Virus record (IMG/VR): IMGVR_UViG_3300046616_000314 | Location: 372,001 to 436,000 of that record | DNA length: 64,000 nt | Reading direction: 5' to 3' (one strand) | Part shown: in pieces, positions 81 to 15,709 of the stretch | How positions within the stretch are numbered: position 1 is the first letter of the stretch | Layout: every line of letters begins with the position of its first letter | Notes under the pieces: model-generated | What the model was told of the DNA's origin: nothing | Databases searched by the model: none | Seen by the model: only the letters and a program-made list of their open reading frames with translations | Position numbers and translations under genes: made by a program

Positions 81-87
81 GAGATAT

Positions 88-2517: not shown

Positions 2518-2777
2518 AGGAACTTCATCTTAAACATCATCGCAACTTCCATGTCGTTGGTACCTATATAGACATAGGCGACAAAATTATCCCTTCGGTA
2601 CATTTCTGTATCAACGATCAACTCCGGTGGTCCTATGATGCCATTCTTATAGCACCATTCCAACTGACCCTGGTTGCGCAAAGCATACCCGGATATTGTG
2701 TTCTCCCAAAGCCAGTCTTCGAATTTACGGGATACAAAAACTTCATCATATGTTACGGCTATTTTGATCATAGCCAT
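2514..2777 (-). CDS. FKLKW-family paralog, member 10 (sister of 9)
   Basis: Ends DMEVAMMFKMKFL; EWCYKNG core. Confidence 0.88.
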   Translation of the reverse strand: MAMIKIAVTYDEVFVSRKFEDWLWENTISGYALRNQGQLEWCYKNGIIGPPELIVDTEMYRRDNFVAYVYIGTNDMEVAMMFKMKFL

Positions 2778-3025
2778 TTCATCTTGAACAAAATGAAGTC
2801 TTCTTCAGTCCCGCCAGGGAACACCAATATCCATTCACCGGTTGGTATCGAATGCAAATGAGGACGGGCGATTTTATGCTCTCTAAACCAATTCAATTCG
2901 GGATGACGCACGGGCGCGAATGGTCGATCACCTGTTCGCCCATGGCGAGGCGCCATATGATCGCGCTCCCAATGCCCGATCTTATCCATGACAACTTCGT
3001 GGGGGATTGGAAAATCCATCAACAA
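2768..3025 (-). CDS. FKLKW-family paralog, member 11
   Basis: Ends TEEDFILFKMKWL. Confidence 0.88.
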   Translation of the reverse strand: MLMDFPIPHEVVMDKIGHWERDHMAPRHGRTGDRPFAPVRHPELNWFREHKIARPHLHSIPTGEWILVFPGGTEEDFILFKMKWL

Positions 3026-3252
3026 AACTTCAGTTTAAAAGCGATAGCTTGTTCTTCGGTGCAATCCAACGTTATGCTCCAAATCGAGGTTTGCATATCG
3101 CAGGTAGCCAATATCGTATCAAAAATTTCGTTCTTCGTACACCATTGTTTGATGTCGGCTCTGTCGATGATATAGGCTGTCAAATTATCATTCCAGTAAT
3201 ACACACCGCGCAGAACATCATTGGTGTGTTGAACATGAATATTCATAGCCAT
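3019..3252 (-). CDS. FKLKW-family paralog, member 12
   Basis: Ends CTEEQAIAFKLKFC; QWCTKN core. Confidence 0.88.
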   Translation of the reverse strand: MAMNIHVQHTNDVLRGVYYWNDNLTAYIIDRADIKQWCTKNEIFDTILATCDMQTSIWSITLDCTEEQAIAFKLKFC

Positions 3253-3518
3253 TTAATTCGCAACAACAGCAGTTGATCTTCGGTTGCATCTTCCCAGAAT
3301 AAAACCCAAGAATCGGGGTCCGAACGTAGATAAAACAAACACGGTATCGTGGGTGGTCCTTGTAGCTTACACCATTCAAGAATGTCGTCATCATTCAACG
3401 GATAGGCGGTGCGAGCATCAGGAAACAAACTTTGAACATACGTGGTAGTATCGTCATTCCGATACCAACCACGCCCCATATTGGCGACCTGATGATGGGT
3501 AAAATTTGCTATAGCCAT
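3243..3518 (-). CDS. FKLKW-family paralog, member 13
   Basis: Ends ATEDQLLLLRIKWL; EWCKLQ core. Confidence 0.85.
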   Translation of the reverse strand: MAIANFTHHQVANMGRGWYRNDDTTTYVQSLFPDARTAYPLNDDDILEWCKLQGPPTIPCLFYLRSDPDSWVLFWEDATEDQLLLLRIKWL

Positions 3519-3760
3519 TTCAGTTTGAACACCGTTGCTTGTTCATCGTCATAGAATCTCAAGAAATATCGAATACGATATTTTACACCACCTTTGATAG
3601 GACAGGGTGTTAAAAATTCTTGCTCGCGATCAATGTCAGGAATGACAATAGTATTTTTCACACACCATGTGTTGATAGCCCGGCTTAAAGTCGTCGTGGT
3701 GTTATTGCCATGAGTCAGCATCATGAGTTTATAGAATGAAACCTCTATTCTCACATCCAT
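3509..3760 (-). CDS. FKLKW-family paralog, member 14
   Basis: Ends LRFYDDEQATVFKLKWL; TWCVKN core. Confidence 0.88.
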   Translation of the reverse strand: MDVRIEVSFYKLMMLTHGNNTTTTLSRAINTWCVKNTIVIPDIDREQEFLTPCPIKGGVKYRIRYFLRFYDDEQATVFKLKWL

Positions 3761-4014
3761 TTGAGTTTAAACGCCGTAGCGTCTTCCTCTGTCTCGAATG
3801 ATGCGAAGTATCTGCGATTGGTTACGGACCAATTAGGCTCAAGCATGACAAGCGGAGGCTTGGACAGATTTAATGCACACCATGCCTCAATATGAGGATG
3901 AAATTCGGTTCGCAGTCTAAGCGGATGCCCCGACATCTGGCTATTGATCAGATTTCGATACTCAGGCGTTGGATAAGGATAGGTGTGACAATCGACCATT
4001 ATACTTACAGCCAT
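3751..4014 (-). CDS. FKLKW-family paralog, member 15
   Basis: Ends SFETEEDATAFKLKWM; AWCALN core. Confidence 0.88.
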   Translation of the reverse strand: MAVSIMVDCHTYPYPTPEYRNLINSQMSGHPLRLRTEFHPHIEAWCALNLSKPPLVMLEPNWSVTNRRYFASFETEEDATAFKLKWM

Positions 4015-4268
4015 TTGAGACTAAACGCCAAAGCGTCTTCCCCACTGGCAAATGTGCCGTAGAAATTGATCATGTATGATCTAGAATCTTGGCTATTATC
4101 CCACACGGTTTCGACTTCGGGCAATGCCGAAATATGTTCTTTGCACCATTCTTCAACGGGTCGTATGAGACCTCGCGCGGGAGCCGTTACAGTGGTTCTT
4201 ACAACCCCAGTGTATTTGAAGCCATCTTCGGGGTAATGGGTATCGATAAGAATTCTCATGATGCCCAT
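4005..4268 (-). CDS. FKLKW-family paralog, member 16
   Basis: Ends TFASGEDALAFSLKWL; EWCKEH core. Confidence 0.88.
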   Translation of the reverse strand: MGIMRILIDTHYPEDGFKYTGVVRTTVTAPARGLIRPVEEWCKEHISALPEVETVWDNSQDSRSYMINFYGTFASGEDALAFSLKWL

Positions 4269-4534
4269 TTCAGTTTGAATAGAGTGGCGTCTTCTTCATT
4301 TTTAAAACAACTGACTACTTGATCGTCACGACTGACTTTCGTTAAATTTCCAGCCATAATATAAAACGTCGGCGGAATATAACCCAAGTTCGCATGACAC
4401 CATTTGTCATACGCGGAGCCATAGTTTTCGGTATGACCTTCGGGATAGCGGTCGCGCCAAGTGGCATACCATCCTTCGGTCTCATAGAATGCATCTATGG
4501 AGAATTCACATTCGTATGGAAAATCTATAGCCAT
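4256..4534 (-). CDS. FKLKW-family paralog, member 17
   Basis: Ends CFKNEEDATLFKLKWAS; KWCHAN core. Confidence 0.88.
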   Translation of the reverse strand: MAIDFPYECEFSIDAFYETEGWYATWRDRYPEGHTENYGSAYDKWCHANLGYIPPTFYIMAGNLTKVSRDDQVVSCFKNEEDATLFKLKWAS

Positions 4535-4800
4535 TTGAGCTTGAACGAAATCATTTCTTCTTCAGAATAAAATGTTAGCACGAACGCAGGCGAATTAACA
4601 TATTCTTCATTCGAGAGGTTGTTCCGACGTGGATGGAATGATGACAACGGAGGATGCGAAAGATATTTCAGACACCAGTGTTTGATGTCTGGTCGCAGTA
4701 TCAAATTTCCACCGGCAAGTTCATACGCCAGAGAGTCTTTGTCCCACAAAGCCAAGGACTCTTTGACCGTGATAGTAATGGTGCTCATGATCATAACCAC
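4525..4800 (-). CDS. FKLKW-family paralog, member 18
   Basis: Ends LTFYSEEEMISFKLKWL; HWCLKY core. Confidence 0.88.
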   Translation of the reverse strand: MVMIMSTITITVKESLALWDKDSLAYELAGGNLILRPDIKHWCLKYLSHPPLSSFHPRRNNLSNEEYVNSPAFVLTFYSEEEMISFKLKWL

Positions 4801-5060
4801 TTCAATTTGAAAGCCAGGGCGTCTTCGTCGTGTTCGAAATGAAGTCTAACTTTCCACTTTAATTTTCCAGATGATAGAGCATCACCATCAGGGCGTTCCA
4901 GGCATTCAACATACGGGAATTTTTGTAACGCCTTTTCACACCACTGGCGTACAATATACACTAGAATCCAATCATCACGCATGGTGGGAATTACCAACTG
5001 GAATGGCGTTCGGTTGACGATTCCAGACCCGTATTCGTATTCAATAACCATTACAGCCAC
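4791..5060 (-). CDS. FKLKW-family paralog, member 19
   Basis: Ends LHFEHDEDALAFKLKWL; QWCEKA core. Confidence 0.88.
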   Translation of the reverse strand: MAVMVIEYEYGSGIVNRTPFQLVIPTMRDDWILVYIVRQWCEKALQKFPYVECLERPDGDALSSGKLKWKVRLHFEHDEDALAFKLKWL

Positions 5061-5320
5061 TTCAATTTGAAGACTAGGGCATCTTCATCGGATACGAAAT
5101 CTATAGAGTATTCCCATTGCCCAAAACGAGAACCAACGAAATCCACAACAGGTAGAGCAATGGCGTTATCTTCACACCATTGAGCGACTTCGGGCGAGAG
5201 TGTCATATCATCGACAAGCCGATCACCCGACAGCACGTTCAATTTAATGACCGGCTTATAATCCGCTGACAGGATATCCCCGATGCCTACGAGATAGGTA
5301 ATCGTTGTCATGTCAGCCAC
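5051..5320 (-). CDS. FKLKW-family paralog, member 20
   Basis: Ends IDFVSDEDALVFKLKWL; QWCEDN core. Confidence 0.88.
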   Translation of the reverse strand: MADMTTITYLVGIGDILSADYKPVIKLNVLSGDRLVDDMTLSPEVAQWCEDNAIALPVVDFVGSRFGQWEYSIDFVSDEDALVFKLKWL

Positions 5321-5544
5321 TTCAATGCGAATACGGTCGCATCTTCATCTGATTTGAATTCAAGATAGAACGTATCGTCACCACCGAATCTTCCGGCGTA
5401 TTCCACTTTGGGAAGCATGGACAGATGTTTGTGACACCAGTGTCGTGCATCGTCGGTAAGCATCCACTTGCCGCCGAAACGATCAACGAGCCATTTTACC
5501 ATTGCTGGTTTTGGCAAAATGTATTCGAGAACGATCATAGCCAT
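5308..5544 (-). CDS. FKLKW-family paralog, member 21
   Basis: Ends LEFKSDEDATVFALKWLT; start placed at the junction MAM (track gives 5565). Confidence 0.85.
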   Translation of the reverse strand: MAMIVLEYILPKPAMVKWLVDRFGGKWMLTDDARHWCHKHLSMLPKVEYAGRFGGDDTFYLEFKSDEDATVFALKWLT

Positions 5545-5795
5545 TTCAACTTGAACGCGGTACAATCTTCGTCTGTTTCAAATCTAAGTTCAACAACCCA
5601 CGATTCTGGTTTGATGAACTTTAATTGTTCCGCGCGAGGAATTGCAGATAGATGCTTAGCCGCCCAATCTTTTGCTTTCGGCATTAATTCCCATACCATG
5701 GGATTACCACTGGTGTCCGATGGACTAACGAGACCGTCGTACTGAAGACTTATCAATTGATCAAATGTTAAAGTTAGAAGAATGTTCATAGCCAT
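5535..5795 (-). CDS. FKLKW-family paralog, member 22
   Basis: Ends LRFETDEDCTAFKLKWL. Confidence 0.88.
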   Translation of the reverse strand: MAMNILLTLTFDQLISLQYDGLVSPSDTSGNPMVWELMPKAKDWAAKHLSAIPRAEQLKFIKPESWVVELRFETDEDCTAFKLKWL

Positions 5796-6031
5796 TTCAA
5801 CTTAAAAAGTACGGCGTTCTCTTCGGTATTGAAATACGCAATGTAATGCGTTCCTGCCGAAAATTCAGGACGATACGAACGAAGATCAACGAGACCTTCC
5901 TTTCTCCATTCAACCACCGGGTCTCGATCTTGCGCATTAATGAGGCTGCTTCCGAAGGCTTTTTGAATCTTCGGAGGTTGGTCGTTTCTAATGGAGCGTA
6001 CCCAAGATACCTGAAATGGAGTCATAGCCAC
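5786..6031 (-). CDS. FKLKW-family paralog, member 23 (QPPKIQ subfamily)
   Basis: Ends AYFNTEENAVLFKLKWL. Confidence 0.88.
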   Translation of the reverse strand: MAMTPFQVSWVRSIRNDQPPKIQKAFGSSLINAQDRDPVVEWRKEGLVDLRSYRPEFSAGTHYIAYFNTEENAVLFKLKWL

Positions 6032-6261
6032 TTCATCCGAAATAGCAGGGCGTTCTCTTCAGTATCGAAATAGGCGGTATACTCTCTACCATTGGAGCCA
6101 TGCAGCCCGGCGGATATAGTGATAAGACCCTGCCATTCGTCCTTGGGTTCACGTGTGCGCGCAATATCAGTCGAAATGATCGTGCTACCGAAGACTGCTT
6201 GAATCTTCGGAGGTTGTTGGTTTGAACTCGTGCGCCGCCACTTTACCGGGATCATAACCAT
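6022..6261 (-). CDS. FKLKW-family paralog, member 24 (QPPKIQ subfamily)
   Basis: Ends AYFDTEENALLFRMKWL. Confidence 0.88.
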   Translation of the reverse strand: MVMIPVKWRRTSSNQQPPKIQAVFGSTIISTDIARTREPKDEWQGLITISAGLHGSNGREYTAYFDTEENALLFRMKWL

Positions 6262-6533
6262 TTCATCCGAAATAGGAGAGCGTCGTCTTCAGATTCAAAT
6301 CTAAAATATACCCAAGCGCGATGATCATTACCCGCGATTTTAACGGGTGACGATGCTCCGCGTTCTTTGAACGCTTGATACTGAAGAGATACAATCACAC
6401 CCGTAGCATCGCACCATTTCTGCACGGGTGGATCAAACATCACCGTCCATTGACCAAAACCGGTGAATGACACAAGGTTTTGTTTTCTGAAGTCTTGATA
6501 GAATTCAGTAATACATGCACCAGTCATAACCAC
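6252..6533 (-). CDS. FKLKW-family paralog, member 25
   Basis: Ends FRFESEDDALLFRMKWL; KWCDAT core. Confidence 0.88.
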   Translation of the reverse strand: MVMTGACITEFYQDFRKQNLVSFTGFGQWTVMFDPPVQKWCDATGVIVSLQYQAFKERGASSPVKIAGNDHRAWVYFRFESEDDALLFRMKWL

Positions 6534-6784
6534 TTAATCCTAAACATAGTGGCGTCATCATCCGACAGGAAATTGATTTGGAATTGATCAATGGTTGAAG
6601 TCACGATAGGGGAATATCCAAAGTTATCCATCGACCATGCTTGAATACTGTCAAGCAATTTCAACTGCCAAATTGTATTGGTGTTATTGTGGTCGCCCCA
6701 CTCGGCAATATCCCGATAGGGTTGAGCCTCTAGCGGATAGCCTACTTTCACATGAAGGATGATCGAATACATCGTTACATCCAC
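6524..6784 (-). CDS. FKLKW-family paralog, member 26
   Basis: Ends INFLSDDDATMFRIKWL. Confidence 0.88.
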   Translation of the reverse strand: MDVTMYSIILHVKVGYPLEAQPYRDIAEWGDHNNTNTIWQLKLLDSIQAWSMDNFGYSPIVTSTIDQFQINFLSDDDATMFRIKWL

Positions 6785-7332
6785 TTCAGCTTAAAATGAG
6801 ACGCTTCTTCTTCAGATGCGAAATAGATAATCACGTCGGTCGAGCCGAATGTAGATTGCATGGTGCGGTGATCTAGAATGAGAATGACGGGCGGAACCAC
6901 GTCTTGTTCGAAACACCATTCCAGAGTCTTCAGTTTCAAACGCATCTGCCAGGGGACAGCCGGGCTATCGAGGAACGTCGATTCGATGAGGTACTTGGGC
7001 GTCGTATATTGCATAGAGATATGCGCGCCATGGTTCAGGATGAACTTCTTGGCGTCATCGACCTTATGGAAGATCATGGCGCCCTGCCCGTCTAAATTGA
7101 CGATGGGGTTGACGGCTCTTAGCCCTGCGTTGGGTCTGACAGAGAAATTTCTGTTGATGGTGATGTCACAGACCATTTCGTGTTGGTTCAACCAATGCAC
7201 GACGGATTGTGTGACATCCGCATCGTATTCGTTGCCGTTCTTGCCTTCGAAGACAAAGCAGCTAGAAACAATCCCTAGTTCGAAATTGAAACTAGGGTCA
7301 TCGCGTGCTGTAATAACGGTCTTCACGATCAT
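6775..7332 (-). CDS. FKLKW-family double-domain paralog, member 27 (185 aa)
   Basis: Internal degenerate motif IFHKVDDAKKF plus terminal IYFASEEEASHFKLKWM. Confidence 0.88.
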   Translation of the reverse strand: MIVKTVITARDDPSFNFELGIVSSCFVFEGKNGNEYDADVTQSVVHWLNQHEMVCDITINRNFSVRPNAGLRAVNPIVNLDGQGAMIFHKVDDAKKFILNHGAHISMQYTTPKYLIESTFLDSPAVPWQMRLKLKTLEWCFEQDVVPPVILILDHRTMQSTFGSTDVIIYFASEEEASHFKLKWM

Positions 7333-7338
7333 GCGCCC

Positions 7339-7366
7339 ATTTTAGCACATGACGAGAATATCTCAA
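7339..7366 (-). promoter_or_regulatory. Internal early-type promoter TTGAGA-N16-TAAAAT with extended -10
   Basis: Lies in the 30-bp gap between members 28 and 27; same 16-bp spacing as the other early promoters in the window. Confidence 0.6.
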
Positions 7367-7557
7367 AGGAATTTTAGTCTGAAGAGTATAGCGTCTTCTT
7401 CATCTTCGAAGATGAAGACATAACCTAACGGACTTGTACTAAAGGAAACGTATTGTTTAGATTTCAACCACTCTCTGACTTCGGTAGCGAAAATGTATCC
7501 GGCTGCATTATAGTGAGCGATGGTCAAACACTCTTCATGCGTCAGGTAAACATTCAT
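7363..7557 (-). CDS. FKLKW-family paralog, member 28 (minimal, 64 aa)
   Basis: Ends FIFEDEEDAILFRLKFL. Confidence 0.88.
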   Translation of the reverse strand: MNVYLTHEECLTIAHYNAAGYIFATEVREWLKSKQYVSFSTSPLGYVFIFEDEEDAILFRLKFL

Positions 7558-7835
7558 AAGAACTTCAACTTGAACAGCATAAGCATTTCATCTGAGATTT
7601 GCTCAAAAGCAAAACGAGCTTTCCATTCCGCTGCGACGCTATCAGTCACATAGGATACAATGAGCGGCGGGATCGGGATGTTGTGCTTGTTGAACCAATC
7701 GAAAATTATACCAGAATCGATGCGATATAGCTTAATATGTTCCGCGCCTTTTCTTTCACTGTGAAGCAAGGTGGCACGACTCTTGAAGTGCGTAAAAGCC
7801 TTATCCCAAGTCATTTCAACTTCAGTCATGACCAT
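7554..7835 (-). CDS. FKLKW-family paralog, member 29
   Basis: Ends ISDEMLMLFKLKFL. Confidence 0.88.
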   Translation of the reverse strand: MVMTEVEMTWDKAFTHFKSRATLLHSERKGAEHIKLYRIDSGIIFDWFNKHNIPIPPLIVSYVTDSVAAEWKARFAFEQISDEMLMLFKLKFL

Positions 7836-8113
7836 TTCAACTTAAACAGTGTGATGAATTCGTCGGTAGCGGCATCATCGAAAACAATTTTACCTTGCCA
7901 TCCTGGCGAATCCAATGACATATCTCTAGGATGAAACACGATTAATTCTTGGATGGGGAAGCCGTGATGAGTACACCAGTTTGTAATTTCACCTGACACT
8001 ACCCGATAGCATAATGTCCAACGGTCACTTTTACTCTCCGTTTTCAACATTACCTCATGTTGGAAATAATGCACAAGCCTATGATATGGCATTTCAATAT
8101 GCATTAGAGCCAC
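7826..8113 (-). CDS. FKLKW-family paralog, member 30 (sister of 29)
   Basis: Ends ATDEFITLFKLKWS; NWCTHH core. Confidence 0.88.
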   Translation of the reverse strand: MALMHIEMPYHRLVHYFQHEVMLKTESKSDRWTLCYRVVSGEITNWCTHHGFPIQELIVFHPRDMSLDSPGWQGKIVFDDAATDEFITLFKLKWS

Positions 8114-8343
8114 TTCATCTTAAAGAGTAGGGCGTCGTCTTCGTTATCGAAATACAAAACGTAATCGCGAGAACGCGAGCCCTTTTCAAAAGCAAGGACT
8201 ATTTCAAATTCTGGCGCCTTGGTTAGATGCTTGGCGTTCCACTCTTCGACTTCGGCGCAGAATTGCCATGTCGTACCGCTATAGCGAACGAGGTATTTGT
8301 CGAACTGATTAAGGGTGCAAAAGACTTCAGTCAGCATTACCAT
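8104..8343 (-). CDS. FKLKW-family paralog, member 31
   Basis: Ends LYFDNEDDALLFKMKWL; start refined to MVMLTEV. Confidence 0.85.
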   Translation of the reverse strand: MVMLTEVFCTLNQFDKYLVRYSGTTWQFCAEVEEWNAKHLTKAPEFEIVLAFEKGSRSRDYVLYFDNEDDALLFKMKWL

Positions 8344-8573
8344 TCCAGGGCGGATGAGCCCCATTTCATTTTGAAGGTAACGGCATCTTCTTCACGATAG
8401 AAACAGATGTCGAAGGTCGTCCACCCCATCTTCTCGATTTTGAATTCTTTGATTTCGGCATTGCGAAACCATTCCCGAATCTCTTCACGAAATTCAGGAA
8501 GCCCATGCCGGATGGGATACTTGAACAAAAATTGTGTATCGGTGTTGACCGGGACTCGTGTGATCTCAACCAT
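8337..8573 (-). CDS. FKLKW-family paralog, member 32
   Basis: CFYREEDAVTFKMKWG plus a short tail. Confidence 0.88.
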   Translation of the reverse strand: MVEITRVPVNTDTQFLFKYPIRHGLPEFREEIREWFRNAEIKEFKIEKMGWTTFDICFYREEDAVTFKMKWGSSALEW

Positions 8574-8820
8574 TGGTATGCCATTTCAATTCGTAAAGAA
8601 CCATGTCTTCATCCGTGGCGAACGTGACATCGATCCACGTTTGGGATCGCTGCTTAGGACGCTGACCGCTATTCGCCCAGTTAAGTCGTTGCATGGCGGT
8701 CAACGGAATCAATTCGGAAACAGCCTCAAAGAGTGGTGATTCGGACAAATGATCCCGGCACCATTCCCGAACTTCATCCCAGGTTTCCACGGGGGTCCGA
8801 AATGTTCTAATCTTAGTCAT
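8566..8820 (-). CDS. FKLKW-family paralog, member 33
   Basis: TFATDEDMVLYELKWHTNG; EWCRDH core. Confidence 0.88.
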   Translation of the reverse strand: MTKIRTFRTPVETWDEVREWCRDHLSESPLFEAVSELIPLTAMQRLNWANSGQRPKQRSQTWIDVTFATDEDMVLYELKWHTNG

Positions 8821-8821
8821 C

Positions 8822-9031
8822 TTAGCCCCATTTCAATTTGAATAGTGTTTGGTCTTCAATATTATGAATAACGATATACGTCACCATAGTCCATCGACCA
8901 TCGCGGCGAACATAATCTGGCATCATACACCAATTACCAGAGAGACACCGATGGCACCAATCGCCACATGCGTTGTAGACCGCATGGGAAATTTCGAACT
9001 TGTCGTCGGTCCAATCTCCAACTTGGATCAT
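8822..9031 (-). CDS. FKLKW-family paralog, member 34
   Basis: Ends HNIEDQTLFKLKWG; DWCHRC core. Confidence 0.88.
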   Translation of the reverse strand: MIQVGDWTDDKFEISHAVYNACGDWCHRCLSGNWCMMPDYVRRDGRWTMVTYIVIHNIEDQTLFKLKWG

Positions 9032-9246
9032 CCGAATTTCATCTTGAACAACATGGCATCTTCGTCACTGTCGAAAATGACATAATACGCTCTATATTTT
9101 CCGGTGGGACCAAGCACGAGATCATCATAAAAATACGACCGCTTCAGATTTTGTTTTGTCCAATACCTAGACGCCCAAAAGGTCGCTTGGGTGATTTCAT
9201 AGCGATTGGCGAAATGTCCGTTGCTTAGTTTCATGCCCCGCACCAC
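9028..9246 (-). CDS. FKLKW-family paralog, member 35
   Basis: Ends VIFDSDEDAMLFKMKFG. Confidence 0.85.
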   Translation of the reverse strand: MVRGMKLSNGHFANRYEITQATFWASRYWTKQNLKRSYFYDDLVLGPTGKYRAYYVIFDSDEDAMLFKMKFG

Positions 9247-9728
9247 TTTATTTTGTATTTCGCGGCTTCGATTTCATCAACGAAATCGATATGCAGTTCG
9301 ACCATTTCGGGTTGATTGGGAACCACATTCGTTCGTTTGATATGGTAGCCCTTCTTGACTTCTTTTTTACACCATTCGCGAACGTGTTCAGGAAAACGCC
9401 AATCCGTATCAATGTATTTCTTTACATCGAAATTATGGCAAGTAATCACCAAGGTATGATACTTGATGAATGCTTCTTTGAATTCGTTCGCGTGTTCACG
9501 GGTCTTGAATGTTATTTCGTAATGGGCGAGCACCGTGCGTTTTTTATCCGACACTAGGTTATGATCGACCGTGGTACTTGTGCGAAGAGTACAGGGATAA
9601 CCCGAATTGGCGATCCAATCGCGAACAGCCGGAAGCAACTCGCCCTTTTTGTTGAAGAAGAACGCTTCATGCAAAATATAATCAACGACATAACGATTGC
9701 CGTGAAAATTTACGCAGATTCTATGCAT
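9231..9728 (-). CDS. FKLKW-family double-domain paralog, member 36 (165 aa)
   Basis: Internal ITFKTREHANEF plus terminal IDFVDEIEAAKYKIKWCGA. Confidence 0.88.
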   Translation of the reverse strand: MHRICVNFHGNRYVVDYILHEAFFFNKKGELLPAVRDWIANSGYPCTLRTSTTVDHNLVSDKKRTVLAHYEITFKTREHANEFKEAFIKYHTLVITCHNFDVKKYIDTDWRFPEHVREWCKKEVKKGYHIKRTNVVPNQPEMVELHIDFVDEIEAAKYKIKWCGA

Positions 9729-10011
9729 TATGCCATTTCAGTTTGAACATGACCATTTCGTCTTCTTTTTCGAAACAGACACAGATATATCCAGGGTACG
9801 AACCGTTCGTACCATATGCGACAATTTCGTATTTTGCCAGGATATTTTCGTCAAACCACGCTTGGGTCTCGGGGTTCAGGCGCAATTGATAGGGATCGAC
9901 CATTTCGTGCAATTGTTCGCGCGACACACCGATTGTAATCTCGTACGGTAATCGTTGTTGAGCCGATCTCATCCGTTGATCGCTCATCGTTCTAGAAGAT
10001 GCCACTTTCAT
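9721..10011 (-). CDS. FKLKW-family paralog, member 37
   Basis: Ends VCFEKEDEMVMFKLKWHNA. Confidence 0.88.
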   Translation of the reverse strand: MKVASSRTMSDQRMRSAQQRLPYEITIGVSREQLHEMVDPYQLRLNPETQAWFDENILAKYEIVAYGTNGSYPGYICVCFEKEDEMVMFKLKWHNA

Positions 10012-10012
10012 A

Positions 10013-10291
10013 CTAGCCCCATTTCAGTTTGAAGATGGTGGCGTGGTCCTCACGATCAAATTCGATAATAAGATAAGATGGGGTGTCATCTGGTGAACGG
10101 CTAAGCATGTCAGCCGAAAAGGCGCCATAACCTTTCATCAAATAGGCATGACTCTCAATCCCGTTGGCACGCATCCATTCACCGATGGCTCCCGTGAATT
10201 TAAATCCTCCGACAGCATACATCATGTCACGAGTCATCGCGTTGATAATCGAGGCGGGTTGATGGAGTGTGACGCGATGAGCTTTGCGCAT
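10013..10291 (-). CDS. FKLKW-family paralog, member 38
   Basis: Ends IEFDREDHATIFKLKWG. Confidence 0.88.
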   Translation of the reverse strand: MRKAHRVTLHQPASIINAMTRDMMYAVGGFKFTGAIGEWMRANGIESHAYLMKGYGAFSADMLSRSPDDTPSYLIIEFDREDHATIFKLKWG

Positions 10292-10597
10292 TTAGAGCCA
10301 CTTCATCTTGAACATCAGAAATTTTTCATCATCATCAAACGGACGCTCGAAACGCAAGATGAGAGAAAACGGAACCGGTGTTGGAGACGCCATATCAAGT
10401 GCTGGCTTAGGAATACCGTTGTCAGCGCACCATTGAGCAACTTCATCACGAACTTGAACCAAGTCCTCATGACGCAATGCCAAACCACTACTGGTGGTCT
10501 TCAACATTACGAGCATCCGAAGTGCGGGAATCCAATCTTCGGGACCTATGGCTTTTGCACGGTCTTCCGTTATAACGATTTCCATCATCAGAGCCAC
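10292..10597 (-). CDS. FKLKW-family paralog, member 39
   Basis: Ends DDEKFLMFKMKWL; QWCADN core. Confidence 0.88.
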   Translation of the reverse strand: MALMMEIVITEDRAKAIGPEDWIPALRMLVMLKTTSSGLALRHEDLVQVRDEVAQWCADNGIPKPALDMASPTPVPFSLILRFERPFDDDEKFLMFKMKWL

Positions 10598-10836
10598 TTC
10601 ATTTTGAACATCAGGGCATTCTCATCGGATTGGAAAGTTAGTTCGTACATAGTTCTAACCCCAGATGGGTTTTCCAGTATGATACGCGATTTAATAATCC
10701 GAGGTAGTTCAATATCATTTTCTGCACACCATGCCCATACGTCATCGGACAATCCGACGTAATGATAGGGCGTACCTTTTACGCTCTGCCATTTCAGCAA
10801 GTGTTCGGACCAAGATATTGAGAGCTTGTTATGCAT
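10588..10836 (-). CDS. FKLKW-family paralog, member 40
   Basis: Ends LTFQSDENALMFKMKWL; AWCAEN core. Confidence 0.88.
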   Translation of the reverse strand: MHNKLSISWSEHLLKWQSVKGTPYHYVGLSDDVWAWCAENDIELPRIIKSRIILENPSGVRTMYELTFQSDENALMFKMKWL

Positions 10837-10880
10837 TAGACTAAGTAGTTGTGTGGCATTGTGTCACCTAGGAGATTATC

Positions 10881-11027
10881 ATGGCTCTATTATTTGCAGT
10901 TCTGGTTCTTGCTGGCTTTGGTTTTTGGTGGTTGGCGACTTGGCCCGTCGCATACGCCGAGCGTATTGCTAAGGGTTTATTCTTTTTCGCAGCCCTTGTG
11001 TGGTTCTTTACTAAGGTAACGATTTAA
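10881..11027 (+). CDS. 48-aa two-helix membrane protein inserted antisense inside the array (MALLFAVLVLAGFGFWWLATWPVAYAERIAKGLFFFAALVWFFTKVTI)
   Basis: Translated by hand; AGGAGA Shine-Dalgarno 5 nt upstream; two hydrophobic segments; followed by a hairpin. Confidence 0.8.
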   Translation: MALLFAVLVLAGFGFWWLATWPVAYAERIAKGLFFFAALVWFFTKVTI

Positions 11028-11034
11028 TAATACT

Positions 11035-11072
11035 ATCGTCGTTCTCTTTCAATCCAGACGGAGAACGACGAT
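11035..11072. terminator. Hairpin ATCGTCGTTCTC-N14-GAGAACGACGAT between convergent genes
   Basis: 12-bp perfect inverted repeat. Confidence 0.65.
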
Positions 11073-11329
11073 CACAACCATTTCATCTTAAACATTAGAG
11101 CATCTTCGTCTGATTTGAAATGTAATAAAATATCCGTCCAATGGGCTGATCCGCCGTTGGGTTCGACGCGGCATCGCCCGATCATTTTAATTTTTGGCAG
11201 GGTTATGTGTTTCTCACACCATGGGCGGATATCATCAGCGATGAACGGTGTGCTAAGAGCTTTGAATCTCTTGTAGCAAAACCATTGGATCACATGATGA
11301 TTTGAATGCACCGTTATAATCATTGCCAT
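11072..11329 (-). CDS. FKLKW-family paralog, member 41
   Basis: Ends LHFKSDEDALMFKMKWL; start refined to the junction MAM. Confidence 0.85.
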   Translation of the reverse strand: MAMIITVHSNHHVIQWFCYKRFKALSTPFIADDIRPWCEKHITLPKIKMIGRCRVEPNGGSAHWTDILLHFKSDEDALMFKMKWL

Positions 11330-11589
11330 TTCAACTTGAATAGAGTCGCGTCTTCTTCTGATTTGAAGAACACTTCGCATATCATATGATCTGACCTTCG
11401 GTTCTTTATAAAAGCACAATCAACACTTACGTAACGATCTGCGCGTCTAAATTTGGGGAATTCCATCCCCTGTTCTTCCATCCAAGCTTCAACGTTGGGA
11501 TGCCATTTGGCTTGGTCCGCAACCGAAGTCTTCTCCGGTGTGAACAGGAAAATATGCGAATACCAAATAACGTCTGTCTTCATTGCCAT
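11320..11589 (-). CDS. FKLKW-family paralog, member 42
   Basis: Ends VFFKSEEDATLFKLKWQ. Confidence 0.88.
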   Translation of the reverse strand: MAMKTDVIWYSHIFLFTPEKTSVADQAKWHPNVEAWMEEQGMEFPKFRRADRYVSVDCAFIKNRRSDHMICEVFFKSEEDATLFKLKWQ

Positions 11590-11855
11590 TTCAATTTAAA
11601 CAAAGCGGCATCTTCTTCGGATGCGAAGAATAGTTCATAGACAGCATGATTAGCCGCCTTACCATCCCTACCAGTAAGGGTTCGGATACGAGGCGAGCGT
11701 TTTATGAATGGAACGAACATTTCATTCGTTTTACACCATGCCAATGCTTCATCGGTAAGCTGTACTCTGAAATTCGAATCGTCGGCTTTACTACGGGTCC
11801 ATTCGAAAATTTCGTTGGTCCAATAGATATCGGTTTGCCAGAATTCAGCTTTCAC
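11580..11855 (-). CDS. FKLKW-family paralog, member 43 (sister of 42)
   Basis: Ends LFFASEEDAALFKLKWQ; GTG start at 11855 overlaps the stop of the upstream passenger gene. Confidence 0.8.
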   Translation of the reverse strand: MKAEFWQTDIYWTNEIFEWTRSKADDSNFRVQLTDEALAWCKTNEMFVPFIKRSPRIRTLTGRDGKAANHAVYELFFASEEDAALFKLKWQ

Positions 11856-12045
11856 TAGGCGAGGCGTCCTTGCCGATCCGAGCCTTGCCAGCCTGAACTT
11901 TCTTGCGTCCAGCTTGCGATAAGGCACCTTCGAATGTTTCGAAGCGTGACGGGACTTTCGCATTGGGATGTTGCCAGATGATCCACGAACCATCGGCTTG
12001 TTTCAGTTCAATGCGCCAGAGGCGTTCAACTTGATCGGTCATCAT
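11845..12045 (-). CDS. 66-aa non-family passenger gene
   Basis: Fills the gap between members 44 and 43; protein-like sequence (LWRIELKQADGSWIIW...FETFEGALSQA). Confidence 0.6.
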   Translation of the reverse strand: MMTDQVERLWRIELKQADGSWIIWQHPNAKVPSRFETFEGALSQAGRKKVQAGKARIGKDASPSES

Positions 12046-12075
12046 CGTTCTCGAAACGTGGCTGATTCCGATATT

Positions 12076-12393
12076 TTACATCCATTTCAGCTTGAATGCA
12101 ACGGCGGCATCTTCACTGTCGAATTCAACTACGTATTCTACGTCAATGAAGCCTCCATCATCGACTTCAACCCGTCTAGCAAAACCCTTGGTGGCGCCAT
12201 CCGAAGTAAATGCTTCCATAACTTCGGAACGAAAATTCCAATAACCATTGGCGAGTGTCCCTTGACACAATGACATTCCAAATTCTTGAATGCGACCGGG
12301 GTGGGTATAACGAGCGGCGGACAGCACGCGATTCAAGCCCAGTGGATCAATAAACGAGCGACGGAACCATGAAACGCGATATGTCATAGCCAC
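12076..12393 (-). CDS. FKLKW-family paralog, member 44
   Basis: Ends VEFDSEDAAVAFKLKWM. Confidence 0.88.
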   Translation of the reverse strand: MAMTYRVSWFRRSFIDPLGLNRVLSAARYTHPGRIQEFGMSLCQGTLANGYWNFRSEVMEAFTSDGATKGFARRVEVDDGGFIDVEYVVEFDSEDAAVAFKLKWM

Positions 12394-12662
12394 TTCAACT
12401 TGAATGCAACCATGTCTTCTTCAGTCTCAAAATCGACATCGTATCTTGCAAAATTTTGACCGGGGACACCAAGGCTTGCACGCATGGCAATTGCGCCGTC
12501 CATTTTGAATAGTTCTAAGACAACGGGACGAATCATCCATTCATCGCCAACGTCTTTACCCTTTGGGGATAAGCAAAGGGTATCTCCGAAGTATTCATAA
12601 ATTCGTTGTGGTTGATGGTCGCGAACGGCTCGAAACCATGTAAGTGTATGTGTCATAACCAT
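12384..12662 (-). CDS. FKLKW-family paralog, member 45
   Basis: Ends VDFETEEDMVAFKLKWL. Confidence 0.88.
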   Translation of the reverse strand: MVMTHTLTWFRAVRDHQPQRIYEYFGDTLCLSPKGKDVGDEWMIRPVVLELFKMDGAIAMRASLGVPGQNFARYDVDFETEEDMVAFKLKWL

Positions 12663-12910
12663 TTCAGCTTAAATGCTACAGCGTCTTCATCGCACGCAAA
12701 ATCAAGTGTTATCGCGATAACACTTCGATCATTATTTGCCCAAGCTGCATGAATAAACTTTATTTCTTTGAAATTAATATTCTTGAACGCCCATGTCTTA
12801 AAATCGTCAGACCATATAGGATTATGTCTCCCCGCGCCGTCTGTATCCAACCGGACGTAGATTTCTAGGACTTTGGGGTATGGAATATAAAATATGCTTG
12901 TCATAGCCAT
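12653..12910 (-). CDS. FKLKW-family paralog, member 46
   Basis: Ends LDFACDEDAVAFKLKWL. Confidence 0.88.
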   Translation of the reverse strand: MAMTSIFYIPYPKVLEIYVRLDTDGAGRHNPIWSDDFKTWAFKNINFKEIKFIHAAWANNDRSVIAITLDFACDEDAVAFKLKWL

Positions 12911-13423
12911 TTCAACTTAAATGCAACCATGTCCTCTGGGGTAACAAAACACATATCCATTTCCGTAGTCTTCATACTATTATCGTTGAAGAATGCGGGC
13001 GGCGTGAGTTTGTGTTCTTCACACCATGCGACCATAGCAAGGCTGAGTTGTAGATACGATCCACCATGCCACATTATGGGATCGTATTTCCCCTTAGTTT
13101 GATATCGAACGGTGGCGCGAATTTTATTTTCTTCGATAAAACGTTTCGCTAGTTCAACACTATCAAATGTGAAGTCACATGAATATCGACTTTCTAGTAA
13201 ACTTATCCTGTCTGGTGTGGTGATCGTATTCGGAGAACGCGACAGATCGCCATCGCAAAGACGTTTCGTTTTGATAACACCAGAACCGGCAGAGGTTCGT
13301 TATCTCGACTTCAGAGGGCGCACGGAAATGTGGGCGATAGATCAGACGCGCTTCTTCACGGGGTTTCTTGATTGTCCCCACACGGCGCCGAAAATTGTTT
13401 GCGAAAATTCCGATCATAGCCAT
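12901..13423 (-). pseudogene. FKLKW-family double-domain member 47, split by a +1 frameshift near 13175-13195
   Basis: Frame A (13423-13175) holds the RFWCYQN core; the +1 frame is open 13299-12901 and reads YSCDFTFDSVELAKRF...AWCEEH...CFVTPEDMVAFKLKWL; fused product about 173 aa. Confidence 0.75.
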
Positions 13424-13674
13424 TTCAGCCTAAAGAGTGTCGCGGCTTCCGTTGAAGTGAATATGAGACGCCAGTGAGGTTTCTTATCCAGGGATCGGAA
13501 GGCTTCGGTAACGTGCAATGCCGGGTGGTTGATACTATTTTTCATGCACCAAACTTTGACGGCGTAATTCATTGCGTAGTGGCTACCACCGAGACAATGG
13601 TATTCGCCGTGTCTATTCAATAACACGATCTTATCGACTTGATCGGGTGTTATCTCAAAGCTCACGTAAGCCAC
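13414..13674 (-). CDS. FKLKW-family paralog, member 48
   Basis: Ends LIFTSTEAATLFRLKWL; VWCMKN core. Confidence 0.88.
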   Translation of the reverse strand: MAYVSFEITPDQVDKIVLLNRHGEYHCLGGSHYAMNYAVKVWCMKNSINHPALHVTEAFRSLDKKPHWRLIFTSTEAATLFRLKWL

Positions 13675-13675
13675 G

Positions 13676-13984
13676 TCACAACCATTTCAATTTGAAAGCG
13701 ACTAGATCATCCTCGGTCTTGAAACCAATGAACCAATGATAACGTTCGCCATTCGGATAGGGCACACCGCCTCCATGGTGTGACAACAGAGGTTCTACCA
13801 TATTTTGGTCGGAACACCATGCTATAATATCGTCGCGAATTCGTTCGCAGACCAAACCGATGCGTTGACGACAGCCATTCTCATCTTGCCAAGCTATATC
13901 ATCCCACTTCCAATAACTCACGGGATGATTGAAACGAGAATCAACTTCAGTCAATTCTTCGCCAGAATAAAATTTCAAAACCAT
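13676..13984 (-). CDS. FKLKW-family paralog, member 49
   Basis: Ends IGFKTEDDLVAFKLKWL; AWCSDQN core. Confidence 0.88.
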   Translation of the reverse strand: MVLKFYSGEELTEVDSRFNHPVSYWKWDDIAWQDENGCRQRIGLVCERIRDDIIAWCSDQNMVEPLLSHHGGGVPYPNGERYHWFIGFKTEDDLVAFKLKWL

Positions 13985-14202
13985 TTCAATTTGAAAAGAG
14001 TTGCATGAGTTTCATCCGCAAATTCGAATCCATAATGACCTAAGTAATTCACCGAGTTAGGATTTATGTCATTGATCTTAAGCCATTGTGCAAATGGTTC
14101 AGCCCATGTGTAATTATAAGACGGCGGCTCGTAATGGAAAATATCATTCAAATTAAGAGAATAACTAGCGGCGACTTTATACGTATTGTTCGTCAAAACC
14201 AT
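13975..14202 (-). CDS. FKLKW-family paralog, member 50
   Basis: Ends FEFADETHATLFKLKWF. Confidence 0.88.
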   Translation of the reverse strand: MVLTNNTYKVAASYSLNLNDIFHYEPPSYNYTWAEPFAQWLKINDINPNSVNYLGHYGFEFADETHATLFKLKWF

Positions 14203-14480
14203 TTCAGTTTAAAAAGGGTTGCTGCGGTTTCTGATGGGAAGTCCAGCGTCATCCATGATGGACAACCATCCGAATGTCTTTTTTCAATATCGAGCATTCC
14301 ACAAGACTGAAAAAACACGTTGGACGAATCAAGGTTATTGAATCTGAACCACTCGACTACATGATCTGCCCAAATAGGCACAAATACCCCAGGATCGGTT
14401 TCTTGAATCCCACGGTACAGTTTGCGCATATTCGCTAGGTCAAGATAGCCGGTGATTCTATACACTGGTTGGTTCAGCAA
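14193..14480 (-). CDS. FKLKW-family paralog, member 51 (first transcribed; sister of 50)
   Basis: Ends LDFPSETAATLFKLKWF. Confidence 0.88.
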   Translation of the reverse strand: MLNQPVYRITGYLDLANMRKLYRGIQETDPGVFVPIWADHVVEWFRFNNLDSSNVFFQSCGMLDIEKRHSDGCPSWMTLDFPSETAATLFKLKWF

Positions 14481-14640: not shown

Positions 14641-14649
14641 ATCTAGTCC

Positions 14650-15708: not shown

Positions 15709-15709
15709 A

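What the first reader, a model, noticed from the sequence alone, without database searches (positions are those of the whole stretch)
10881..11072. Antisense membrane micro-gene with its own terminator interrupts the array and holds the window's only GGCC
Seen: a 48-aa gene with two hydrophobic helices, a strong ribosome-binding site and a 12-bp hairpin sits on the opposite strand between members 41 and 40. It contains the single GGCC I found (10942-10945), inside a Trp-Pro dipeptide that cannot be encoded without GGCC. Established: very small inner-membrane phage proteins include superinfection-exclusion factors and holins. Inference: this is either a recent insertion or one whose WP is essential. 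It also breaks array transcription at this point.
Basis: partly seen in the sequence, partly recalled or inferred. Interest (0 to 1): 0.6.

Follow-up and report, generated by a model that had tools for sequence, protein, structure and literature searches.

The report
Roving membrane micro-gene in a megaphage
A real, conserved 48-residue two-helix membrane protein gene, carried with its own short leader and sitting at a different spot in each related giant phage, lies backwards inside a long run of paralogous genes. Its lone GGCC survives because its conserved Trp-Pro pair cannot be spelled any other way.

Summary
ORF 10881-11027(+), 48 aa, has AGGAG 6 nt before the ATG. A perfect 12-bp hairpin lies at 11035-11072. 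The window's only GGCC (178 expected) is the Trp21-Pro22 codon pair.

The gene is real. At least 81 metagenomic protein clusters of 44-60 aa are homologous, all seen in phage contexts, with dN/dS 0.11. AlphaFold2 gives a helical hairpin (pLDDT 93.6). The family is not in Pfam, PHROGs, NCBIfam or PADLOC.

The window belongs to a 561-kb myophage. Four related giant-phage sequences carry the gene with a conserved leader (CTAAGTA-type box, small covarying hairpin, GGAG), each at a different place. Here, and in at least two other phages, it is a lone gene on the opposite strand. It is the only interruption of a minus-strand array of about 58 genes.

GGCC is purged genome-wide (21 sites against about 1750 expected). 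Thirteen survivors are in-frame Trp-Pro and two are in tRNA genes. Trp-Pro is the most depleted dipeptide (12 against 117). The site therefore reflects constraint, not evident recency.

Function is not shown. The likeliest reading is a moron-like accessory inner-membrane protein; a holin role is a weaker rival. The hairpin is unlike this genome's canonical terminators, so the break in array transcription stays untested.

The parts
10839..10847 (+). Conserved 9-mer GACTAAGTA, the 5' edge of the shared leader. It starts 2 nt beyond the start codon (10834-10836) of the neighbouring minus-strand gene.
   Evidence: Invariant in the window, L001-L003 and L004, with the variant CTAACTA in L135. The 9-mer occurs once in the 578-kb relative G001, at this leader. 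It occurs 3 times in G000, and the other two are inside ATG-ACT-AAG-TAT coding starts.
10853..10867 (+). Small leader hairpin GTGGCA-TTG-TGTCAC (6 pairs, one G-U), 2 nt before the Shine-Dalgarno box.
   Evidence: The same position holds GTGACA/TGTCAC in L004, GTGGCG/CGCCAC in L135 and GTGGG/CCCAC in L001. That gives two pairs with changes on both sides. It is weak on its own in the window (z +1.1).
10870..10874 (+). Shine-Dalgarno AGGAG, with a 6-nt spacer to the ATG.
   Evidence: Read directly. GGAG or AGGAG occupies the same place in L001, L004 and L135.
10881..11027 (+). Micro-gene of 48 aa (protein P0001): helix 2-18, turn ATWPVAY, helix 26-45. The loop motif E-R-I-A-K/R-G is conserved.
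   Evidence: ORF. Homologues. dN/dS 0.11. AlphaFold2 pLDDT 93.6. No paralogue in its own genome.
10941..10946 (+). TGG-CCC = Trp21-Pro22 in the inter-helix turn. It contains the window's only GGCC (10942-10945).
   Evidence: WP is conserved in the closer homologues examined.
11035..11072 (.). 12-bp perfect hairpin with a 14-nt loop between the two convergent stop codons. Its last base is the third base of the stop codon of minus-strand gene 11072-11329.
   Evidence: It is the only looped hairpin of this size in window 1-16000 apart from 14273-14321. The T-rich tail is on the minus strand only. It is not of the genome's canonical terminator class.
10588..10836 (-). Array member downstream of the cassette (82 aa, ends FKMKWL). 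It lacks the array's usual 10-nt overlap coupling and has no Shine-Dalgarno box; its 5' flank is the reverse complement of the cassette leader.
11072..11329 (-). Array member upstream of the cassette (85 aa from the internal ATG; ends FKMKWL). It is coupled to its own upstream neighbour by the usual overlap.

Best explanation
The feature is a genuine protein-coding micro-gene from an unnamed family of phage proteins, 44-60 aa long, that fold as a two-helix membrane hairpin. It travels as a compact unit: a leader of about 42 nt (CTAAGTA-type box, small stem-loop, GGAG), the ORF, and a 3' structured element. Within one clade of giant myophages this unit sits at a different locus in each genome. 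In this 561-kb phage it occupies one slot of a long minus-strand paralogue array, in reverse orientation, as an independent, moron-like expression unit.

Shown: the gene is under strong purifying selection. The leader is conserved although synonymous sites are saturated. The position varies among relatives. The lone-antisense placement recurs in other phages.

Inferred: the protein inserts in the host inner membrane. The conserved Glu-Arg-x-x-Lys/Arg loop would face the cytoplasm and both termini the periplasm. It would act there as an accessory factor on a schedule different from its neighbours, most plausibly in superinfection exclusion or another membrane or host-envelope modulation.

The GGCC is retained because Trp-Pro in the inter-helix turn is conserved in this subfamily and is the one coding context where GGCC cannot be removed silently. 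The same holds for most other surviving GGCC sites of this genome, which otherwise avoids GGCC almost completely.

The hairpin between the convergent stops probably limits collision or read-through between the cassette and the array. Which strand it serves is not established.
For: Coding and conservation:
- Homologues of 78%, 75% and 73% identity, and many at 40-66%.
- dN/dS 0.11, with pS 0.67-0.93.
- AlphaFold2 helical hairpin, pLDDT 93.6.

Phage-only contexts: portal, terminase, SSB, virion proteins, rIIA/rIIB, ClpP, integrase.

Cassette:
- Leader box and covarying hairpin shared by the window, L001-3, L004 and L135.
- The 9-mer is unique to the leader in G001.
- A 3' hairpin follows the ORF in the window, L001 and L135, and a tRNA follows it in L004.

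Different loci in relatives:
- G001 (baseplate wedge 59% identical) has it between two tRNA-Trp genes.
- The flanks of L135 are syntenic with G000 223-236 kb, where G000 lacks it.
- No flank synteny otherwise, and a single copy in G000.

Lone opposite-strand placement recurs in L135 and in the 40.9-kb contig of P0004 (also seen in L010); L137/L138 have a + strand trio.

It is the only interruption of the array.

GGCC logic:
- 21 sites against about 1750 expected.
- 13 are in-frame TGG-CCN and 2 lie in tRNA genes.
- WP 12 observed against 117 expected, with PW 106 against 117 as control.
- Relatives G001 and L135 are not GGCC-depleted yet keep WP.
Against: - No expression data could be obtained.
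- No promoter was identified. The leader box is not a general promoter motif of this genome, and no sigma-70-like site fits.
- Composition is not foreign: GC 47% and GC3 46%, close to the genome. This is atypical for a classical moron.
- No sequence link to any known exclusion protein, holin or defence protein.
- One homologue (L006) sits in what looks like a lysis cassette, which favours the rival.
- The hairpin is unlike the genome's canonical terminators and has no T-tract on the gene's own strand.
Confidence: 0.6

Rival explanations
1. The micro-protein is a holin, antiholin or other lysis-cassette component. It accumulates in the inner membrane and helps time or form the lesion that releases the endolysin.
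For: In L006 the 45-aa homologue overlaps (ATGA) the end of a 179-aa coiled-coil protein with a C-terminal membrane helix. It also overlaps (TGATG) the start of a 223-aa protein matching Rv2525c_GlyHyd-like PF08924 (E 3e-11, above the cut-off). These follow a fibre-like gene, which is the classical lysis-cassette layout. In L011 and the P0011 contig it lies just upstream of the small and large terminase genes, where some phages keep their lysis genes.
Against: - Only one of about 12 examined contexts has a muralytic neighbour.
- C-terminal tails are 1-8 residues with few charges, unlike holins.
- None of 20 members matches a Pfam holin family, even at E 1, and none matches a PHROG lysis family.
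- In the window the neighbours are array genes.
- PF08924, PF00959 and PF01510 find nothing in the whole genome.
- In L014 it sits in a replication module.
Confidence: 0.2
2. The GGCC survives because the cassette is a recent horizontal arrival that has not yet been purged, not because Trp-Pro is constrained.
For: The cassette occupies different loci in related phages, so it has moved. Distant family members tolerate Phe, Ile or Leu in place of Trp, so a one-step Trp-to-Leu change could remove the site.
Against: - No close donor exists: synonymous sites are saturated against all homologues.
- GC and GC3 match the resident genome, while most homologues have GC3 0.60-0.98.
- The ORF has no avoidable GGCC, whereas the L001 homologue has three GGCC in all.
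- WP is kept in the closer homologues examined, including those from genomes that do not avoid GGCC.
- Thirteen of 21 genomic survivors are WP in old core-size genes.
Confidence: 0.12
3. The hairpin is an efficient intrinsic terminator that cuts the array into two operons. The cassette is chiefly a transcriptional insulator, and the ORF is secondary.
For: The hairpin abuts the stop codon of the upstream array gene. On the array strand it is followed by a T-rich stretch, 5 T in 8 starting 2 nt after the stem. It is the only such structure inside the array. The next array gene has lost the usual overlap coupling.
Against: - No sigma-70-like promoter lies on the minus strand between the hairpin and the next array gene to restart transcription of the roughly 32 downstream array genes.
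- The hairpin has 50% GC, a 14-nt loop and no A/T tracts. The roughly 25 canonical terminators of this genome have an A-tract, a GC-rich stem, a tetraloop and a T-tract.
- The ORF is under strong purifying selection, so it is not secondary.
Confidence: 0.25
4. The ORF is a toxin-like hydrophobic peptide held in check by antisense RNA. Array read-through transcripts pair with its mRNA and gate expression until array transcription falls.
For: The gene is fully antisense to a long transcription unit here and in at least two other phages. It encodes a small, strongly hydrophobic peptide (mean Kyte-Doolittle hydropathy 1.49).
Against: In other family members the gene is co-oriented with its neighbours and translationally coupled to them (L006, L014, L011). 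There is no evidence of toxicity, and no dedicated antisense promoter or RNA was identified.
Confidence: 0.08
5. The ORF is a chance open frame in a non-coding spacer.
For: It is only 48 codons. Two other + strand frames of 48 and 56 codons overlap it.
Against: There are 81 homologous clusters of the same length, dN/dS is 0.11, the fold is confident, and a Shine-Dalgarno box is conserved.
Confidence: 0.01

Closest known systems
Morons of tailed phages (for example the HK97 gp15 element, a small inner-membrane superinfection-exclusion protein inserted among tail genes; recalled from the literature, not tested here)
   Same: A single small accessory gene with its own flanking signals is dropped between genes of an unrelated operon. 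It is present at that spot in one genome and absent there in relatives, and its product is a small membrane protein.
   Different: No promoter was identified. Composition is not foreign. The host genome is a 561-kb, probably virulent, giant phage rather than a temperate lambdoid. The gene is inverted relative to its neighbours. There is no sequence similarity to any named exclusion protein.
T4 micro membrane proteins Ac (51 aa) and gp52.1 (46 aa), near the rII region
   Same: They are phage-encoded predicted membrane proteins of about 50 aa with a poorly understood role (annotation). The L135 homologue also lies next to rIIA/rIIB-like genes.
   Different: No detectable homology: hhalign probability 3.5% and 0.1%. 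The T4 genes are co-oriented with their neighbours.
Class II holins and pinholins (two membrane helices, for example S21 of phage 21; recalled)
   Same: Small size, two membrane helices, and one homologue directly upstream of a putative muralytic enzyme.
   Different: It is much shorter and has no charged C-terminal tail. It matches no holin family. It is not next to an endolysin in the window or in most other contexts.
Restriction-site avoidance in phage genomes (for example GGCC-poor Bacillus phages facing BsuRI or HaeIII-type enzymes; recalled)
   Same: Near-complete loss of one 4-base palindrome: 21 observed against about 1750 expected.
   Different: Here the purge reaches the protein level. 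Trp-Pro is the most depleted dipeptide (0.10 of expectation), and the survivors are mainly Trp-Pro codons and tRNA stems. My one literature search on this found no relevant paper.

Membership tests
Moron (autonomous accessory gene unit in a phage operon) | Present at a locus in one genome and absent from the corresponding locus of related genomes | tested here: met
   G001, L135 and L001 carry the gene at other loci. The G000 region syntenic to the L135 flanks lacks it, and G000 has one copy.
Moron (autonomous accessory gene unit in a phage operon) | Own promoter upstream and own terminator downstream | tested here: inconclusive
   A conserved leader and a 3' hairpin exist. No recognisable promoter was found. 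The hairpin lacks a T-tract on the gene's strand and differs from canonical terminators.
Moron (autonomous accessory gene unit in a phage operon) | Nucleotide composition distinct from the surrounding genome | tested here: not met
   Gene GC 47% and GC3 46%, cassette GC 44%, against a genome GC of 48% and mean GC3 of 52%.
Holin | Sequence membership of a described holin family | tested here: not met
   No Pfam, PHROG or NCBIfam holin match for any of 20 members at E up to 1.
Holin | Gene adjacent to the endolysin gene | tested here: not met
   Not met in the window, where the neighbours are array genes. Three common endolysin families find nothing in the genome. It is met only in homologue L006.
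Holin | Hydrophilic, highly charged C-terminal tail after the last membrane helix | tested here: not met
   Tails are 1-8 residues, mostly Gly, Ala or Ser, with 0-1 charge.
Holin | Lethal membrane lesion on expression | not testable with these tools
   Needs expression in a host.
Superinfection-exclusion membrane proteins (T4 Imm, HK97 gp15 type) | Small inner-membrane protein | tested here: met
   Two hydrophobic helices are predicted at pLDDT 93.6, and the mean hydropathy is 1.49. Membrane location itself is inferred.
Superinfection-exclusion membrane proteins (T4 Imm, HK97 gp15 type) | Homology to a characterised exclusion protein, or an exclusion phenotype | tested here: not met
   No match in PHROGs, Pfam, NCBIfam or PADLOC. 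The phenotype is not testable here.
Intrinsic (Rho-independent) terminator | GC-rich stem with a short loop, followed by a U-tract on the transcribed strand | tested here: inconclusive
   The stem is 12 bp at 50% GC and the loop is 14 nt. On the + strand the tail is CACAACCA, with no T. On the - strand the tail has 5 T in 8 from 2 nt after the stem. The consensus scan did not list it, and it is unlike the genome's canonical class.
Type I toxin-antitoxin | Small hydrophobic toxin with a dedicated overlapping antisense RNA, found on bacterial chromosomes or plasmids | tested here: not met
   All contexts examined are phage contigs; one further hit, not examined, is labelled a Caulobacteraceae MAG. 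No antisense RNA gene was identified. Several homologues are co-oriented with their neighbours and translationally coupled.

The most novel reading that the evidence does not exclude
The leader-ORF-hairpin unit may be a self-contained mobile micro-cassette that relocates within and between giant-phage genomes. This would be the smallest kind of roving gene. Its repeated insertion backwards into long operons would then be functional: read-through of the host operon makes antisense RNA that silences the membrane-active peptide until that operon shuts off. That would give a built-in infection-stage timer.
Probability: 0.12. Interest if true: 0.75.

Novelty: new member of a known kind. Interest (0 to 1): 0.45.

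Why it matters
Small membrane proteins are the least understood part of phage gene content, and gene callers and family databases usually miss them. This case defines a family of at least 81 clusters, absent from Pfam, PHROGs and NCBIfam, with a confident fold and a conserved loop motif. It also has an unusual genomic habit: a compact unit with its own leader that changes place among related giant phages and often sits backwards in an operon. That makes it a tractable candidate for a new exclusion, lysis-timing or host-membrane factor.

The GGCC result is a clean natural experiment. In a 561-kb genome the purge of one restriction site has removed about 90% of Trp-Pro dipeptides. The roughly 13 survivors, this one included, therefore mark Trp-Pro pairs likely to be functionally important. 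The site also offers a direct handle for testing restriction sensitivity.

Tried and rejected
- GenBank phages. Megablast and blastn of the region found no match. tblastn with the micro-protein and with an array member also found none.
- Own-genome tblastn found no paralogue of the micro-protein.
- Scans against Pfam, PHROGs, NCBIfam and PADLOC gave nothing significant for the single protein or for 20 family members. The best hit was a Thivi_2564-family match at E 0.01 in 4 members, which I did not treat as evidence.
- The ESM Atlas feature search returned only unnamed clusters at scores of 0.83-0.84, in the range shuffled proteins reach.
- A genome-contig scan of 185,579 species genomes found no relative.
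- Metagenome hit L007 is a 112-aa protein that shares only the first helix. I rejected it as a homologue.
- A DNA pattern scan of viral contigs for leader plus ORF start returned 119 or more chance hits. Screening them by tblastn added no new homologue.
- RNAalifold on the MAFFT leader alignment predicted no structure, because the 5' arm of L001 is shifted by one column. I read the hairpin pairs directly instead.
- The codon-usage test for foreignness was uninformative: the genome's bias is weak and the homologues score higher than the resident gene.
- The idea that the 10-codon frame starting in the KWL-stop overlap of gene 11072-11329 is a vestige of a truncated array member was dropped. Its first four residues are forced by the overlapping codons.
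- CTAAGTA as a general promoter was rejected. The motif is under-represented genome-wide (26 on both strands against 38 expected per strand). It appears in only three TTGACA-type promoter spacers.
- Homology to T4 Ac and gp52.1 was rejected by hhalign.
- I did not run complex prediction, because I make no binding claim.

Full report
**1. What the sequence shows**

On the + strand, AGGAG at 10870-10874 is followed after 6 nt by ATG at 10881. The frame is open for 48 codons and ends with two successive TAA codons at 11025-11030. Seven bases after the first stop codon a perfect 12-bp inverted repeat begins. Its arms are 11035-11046 and 11061-11072, separated by a 14-nt loop. The fold is far better than shuffles on either strand: -21.8 kcal/mol with z -5.6 on +, and -23.3 kcal/mol with z -3.7 on -. 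The last base of the hairpin is the third base of the stop codon of the minus-strand gene 11072-11329, so the hairpin fills the space between two convergent stops.

GGCC occurs once in the 64-kb window, at 10942-10945, where 178 +/- 13 are expected. It lies in TGG-CCC, codons 21-22 of the ORF.

**2. The genome and the array**

The window is bases 372001-436000 of a single 561,116-bp virus contig, G000. CheckV rates it 97% complete. Structural genes identify a giant myophage: baseplate wedge, hub with an SLT domain, and virion proteins. The nearest GenBank relatives are Sinorhizobium phage Phosso and Agrobacterium phage Atu_ph07, with 39% identity in the wedge protein. A 578,292-bp IMG/VR genome with terminal repeats, G001, is closer at 59%.

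The surrounding genes belong to a paralogue family of 70-105 aa proteins that end in FKLKWL-like motifs. A profile of 24 members matches 148 places in G000 but only 3, weakly, in G001. From window -1655 to 14480 about 58 members lie head to tail on the minus strand. Most overlap by 10 nt, so the end of one gene and the start of the next share the same bases. My first motif scan left about a dozen apparent gaps. All but one hold members with variant endings such as FKLKFL. The interval 10837-11071 is the only one that holds a + strand gene and no family member. The statement that the micro-gene interrupts the array is therefore correct, and the interruption is unique.

**3. It is a real gene**

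A word-index search found a 50-aa protein, 78% identical, on three short ENA contigs. A viral-contig scan found a 50-aa protein, 75% identical, in G001. A metagenome scan found a 45-aa one.

A profile search of 1.84 billion representative proteins gave 16 hits at E below 1e-3, mostly of 47-57 aa. A second word search with the 20-sequence alignment gave 81 clusters, nearly all of 44-60 aa and all labelled hypothetical or unnamed.

Between the window gene and its closest homologue, 24 of 36 synonymous sites differ but only 18 of 108 non-synonymous ones (dN/dS 0.11). Against G001, synonymous sites are saturated (pS 0.81) while pN is 0.14.

AlphaFold2 on the family alignment predicts helix 2-18, a turn at ATWPVAY, and helix 26-45, with mean pLDDT 93.6. 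Nearly invariant residues are Phe5, Phe13, Ala19, Arg28, Ala30 and Gly32. The loop motif is Glu-Arg-Ile-Ala-Lys/Arg-Gly.

No member matches Pfam, PHROGs, NCBIfam or PADLOC. No GenBank phage has a tblastn match, and the 185,579 species genomes yielded none.

**4. A compact unit that changes place**

Upstream of the ATG, the window, the ENA contigs (L001-L003) and G001 (L004) share an invariant GACTAAGTA. A short stem-loop and GGAG follow it. A fourth copy, L135 (73% identical protein), has CTAACTA, the stem GTGGCG/CGCCAC and AGGAGA.

The stem keeps pairing through changes on both sides at two positions among the four sequences. This conservation stands out because synonymous sites in the adjoining ORF are saturated. 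The 9-mer occurs exactly once in the 578-kb G001, at this leader.

Downstream of the ORF:
- the window, L001 and L135 each have a stable hairpin of unrelated sequence within about 15 nt of the stop;
- in G001 a tRNA-Trp gene begins at the stop codon.

The flanks differ in every case:
- In G001 the gene lies between two tRNA-Trp genes at the end of a 31-tRNA cluster.
- In L135 it lies between a T5orf172 gene and a block holding a 150-aa protein, an rIIA-like gene and rIIB. That neighbourhood is syntenic with G000 223-236 kb (ClpP 60%, T5orf172 49%, rIIB 45% identical), where G000 has no copy.
- The flanks of L001 and L004 have no counterparts next to the window gene.

G000 has a single copy. 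So four related giant-phage sequences hold the unit at four different loci.

**5. The backward orientation recurs**

In L135 the gene is the only + strand gene in a 7.7-kb run of minus-strand genes. In a 40.9-kb phage contig (P0004, also seen in L010) it is again the lone opposite-strand gene. In L137 and L138 it heads a trio of small + strand genes between minus-strand blocks. In L136 it ends a + strand unit that converges on an integrase block.

Elsewhere it is co-oriented with its neighbours:
- after an SSB-like gene in a replication module (L014);
- upstream of the terminase and a P22-type portal (L011 and the P0011 contig);
- after a virion protein (L008).

The gene is thus tied to no functional module. 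That is the habit of accessory genes.

**6. The GGCC**

The whole genome has 21 GGCC where about 1750 are expected. No other 4-base palindrome falls below 0.79 of expectation.
- Twelve of the 21 are in-frame TGG-CCN in ORFs of 152-983 aa. The micro-gene makes thirteen, and one more is ambiguous.
- Two lie in tRNA genes: tRNA-Ala at 7936-8011 and tRNA-Lys at 553198-553273.
- In a crude proteome of 860 ORFs, Trp-Pro occurs 12 times against 117 expected. It is by far the most depleted dipeptide. The reverse pair Pro-Trp is normal at 106 against 117.

The survivors are therefore the sites that cannot be removed silently. The micro-gene's site fits the genome-wide rule and is not an anomaly.

Trp-Pro is kept in the closer homologues examined, including those from G001 and L135, whose DNA is not GGCC-depleted. 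More distant members have Phe, Ile or Leu at the Trp position. The Trp is therefore constrained within the subfamily but is not indispensable to the fold.

Nothing points to recent arrival. There is no close donor. GC and GC3 equal the genome's. No avoidable GGCC remains in the ORF, though at 234 bp that absence alone is not significant.

**7. The hairpin and array transcription**

G000 has 83 hairpins with perfect stems of at least 10 bp, against 6-9 in shuffles. About 25 of them form one canonical class: an A-tract, a GC-rich stem, a tetraloop and a T-tract. These lie mostly in intergenic regions, several of them between convergent genes.

The 11035-11072 hairpin is not of that class. Its stem is 50% GC, its loop is 14 nt, and its arms have no A or T tracts. 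On the gene's own strand it is followed by CACAACCA. On the array strand it is followed by a moderately T-rich stretch.

If it stopped array transcription efficiently, the roughly 32 array genes downstream would need a new promoter. None is recognisable on the minus strand between the hairpin and the next start codon. That next gene (10588-10836) has lost the usual overlap coupling and has no Shine-Dalgarno box. Its 5' flank is simply the reverse complement of the cassette leader.

I therefore regard the break in array transcription as possible but unproven. The hairpin may equally serve as a 3' end or stabiliser for the micro-gene, as the 3' structures in the other three copies suggest. 

**8. 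Function**

Shown: the product is a conserved phage protein with two hydrophobic helices and a short basic loop.

Inferred: it inserts in the host inner membrane, with the loop in the cytoplasm by the positive-inside rule.

Its roaming, module-independent and often inverted placement, with a private leader, fits a moron-like accessory gene expressed on its own schedule. Known small phage membrane proteins of that habit act in superinfection exclusion or envelope modulation. I hold that as the most likely class of function.

The main rival is a lysis role. In L006 the homologue is translationally coupled between a coiled-coil membrane protein and a PF08924 glycoside-hydrolase-like protein. Against that rival:
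- this is one context in about twelve;
- the tails lack the charged C-terminus of holins;
- no holin family matches;
- three common endolysin families are absent from G000.

T4 Ac (51 aa) and gp52.1 (46 aa) are analogues in size and neighbourhood but are not homologues.

**9. Verdict**

The feature is a new, unnamed family belonging to a known kind, the small accessory membrane proteins of phages. It has an unusual mobile-cassette habit, and its GGCC is explained by a genome-wide rule. Interest is moderate.

Noticed in passing
window -1655..14480 (minus strand) and genome-wide in G000: A paralogue family of 70-105 aa proteins with a conserved W-C-x-x-N block and an EEDAxxFKLKWL C-terminus has 148 profile matches in this one phage genome but only 3 weak ones in the closest relative G001. 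Most array neighbours overlap by exactly 10 nt, so KWL-stop and the next Met-Ala-Met start share bases. There is no Pfam, PHROG or GenBank-phage match.
   Followed up: partly
whole genome G000 (window included): Restriction-site avoidance reaches the proteome. Trp-Pro is the most depleted dipeptide (12 observed, 117 expected; Pro-Trp 106 of 117). Thirteen of the 21 surviving GGCC sites are in-frame Trp-Pro codons.
   Followed up: yes
G000 7938-7941 (tRNA-Ala) and 553241-553244 (tRNA-Lys): Two of the non-Trp-Pro GGCC survivors lie inside tRNA genes, one of them in the acceptor stem of tRNA-Ala. This is another context where the site cannot be changed freely.
   Followed up: partly
window 16146-17072 (-): A 307-aa C5-cytosine DNA methyltransferase aligns over its full length with M.HhaI (E 5e-73), but with M.HaeIII only over the catalytic part (E 2e-36). 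GCGC is not depleted in the genome (0.96 of expectation). The phage may protect GCGC by methylation and evade GGCC cutters by avoidance.
   Followed up: partly
L004 1-10227 (G001, IMG/VR 578-kb genome): There are 31 tRNA genes in 10 kb, and the micro-gene is wedged between two diverged tRNA-Trp(CCA) copies. The second tRNA starts at the gene's stop codon. G000 has 36 tRNAs but a single tRNA-Trp and no micro-gene there.
   Followed up: partly
G000 20252, 322221, 398775 (the last is window 26775): Three sigma-70-like promoters of the form TTGACA, 0-2 nt, CTAAGTA, 7-9 nt, TAnnnT share the CTAAGTA heptamer in the spacer with the micro-gene leader. Overall the heptamer is under-represented, with 26 on both strands against 38 expected per strand.
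   Followed up: no
G000, about 25 sites such as 217810, 327961, 466222, 490347 and window 54060: This genome's canonical terminators have an A-tract, a GC-rich stem of 10-14 bp, a tetraloop and a T-tract, and look bidirectional. They lie mostly in intergenic regions, several between convergent genes. None lies inside the paralogue array.
   Followed up: partly
L006 746-2448: A putative lysis cassette lies in a 3.9-kb metagenome contig. In order: a 179-aa coiled-coil protein with a C-terminal membrane helix (weak XhlA-like hit), the 45-aa micro-protein homologue, a 223-aa Rv2525c-like glycoside hydrolase, and a 126-aa membrane protein. The first three are joined by overlapping stop and start codons, and the last overlaps the hydrolase gene by 23 nt.
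   Followed up: partly
L015 516-719: In one homologue contig the micro-gene overlaps a 67-aa Gly-rich two-helix membrane protein. From memory it resembles the DUF3309 type, which I did not test.
   Followed up: no
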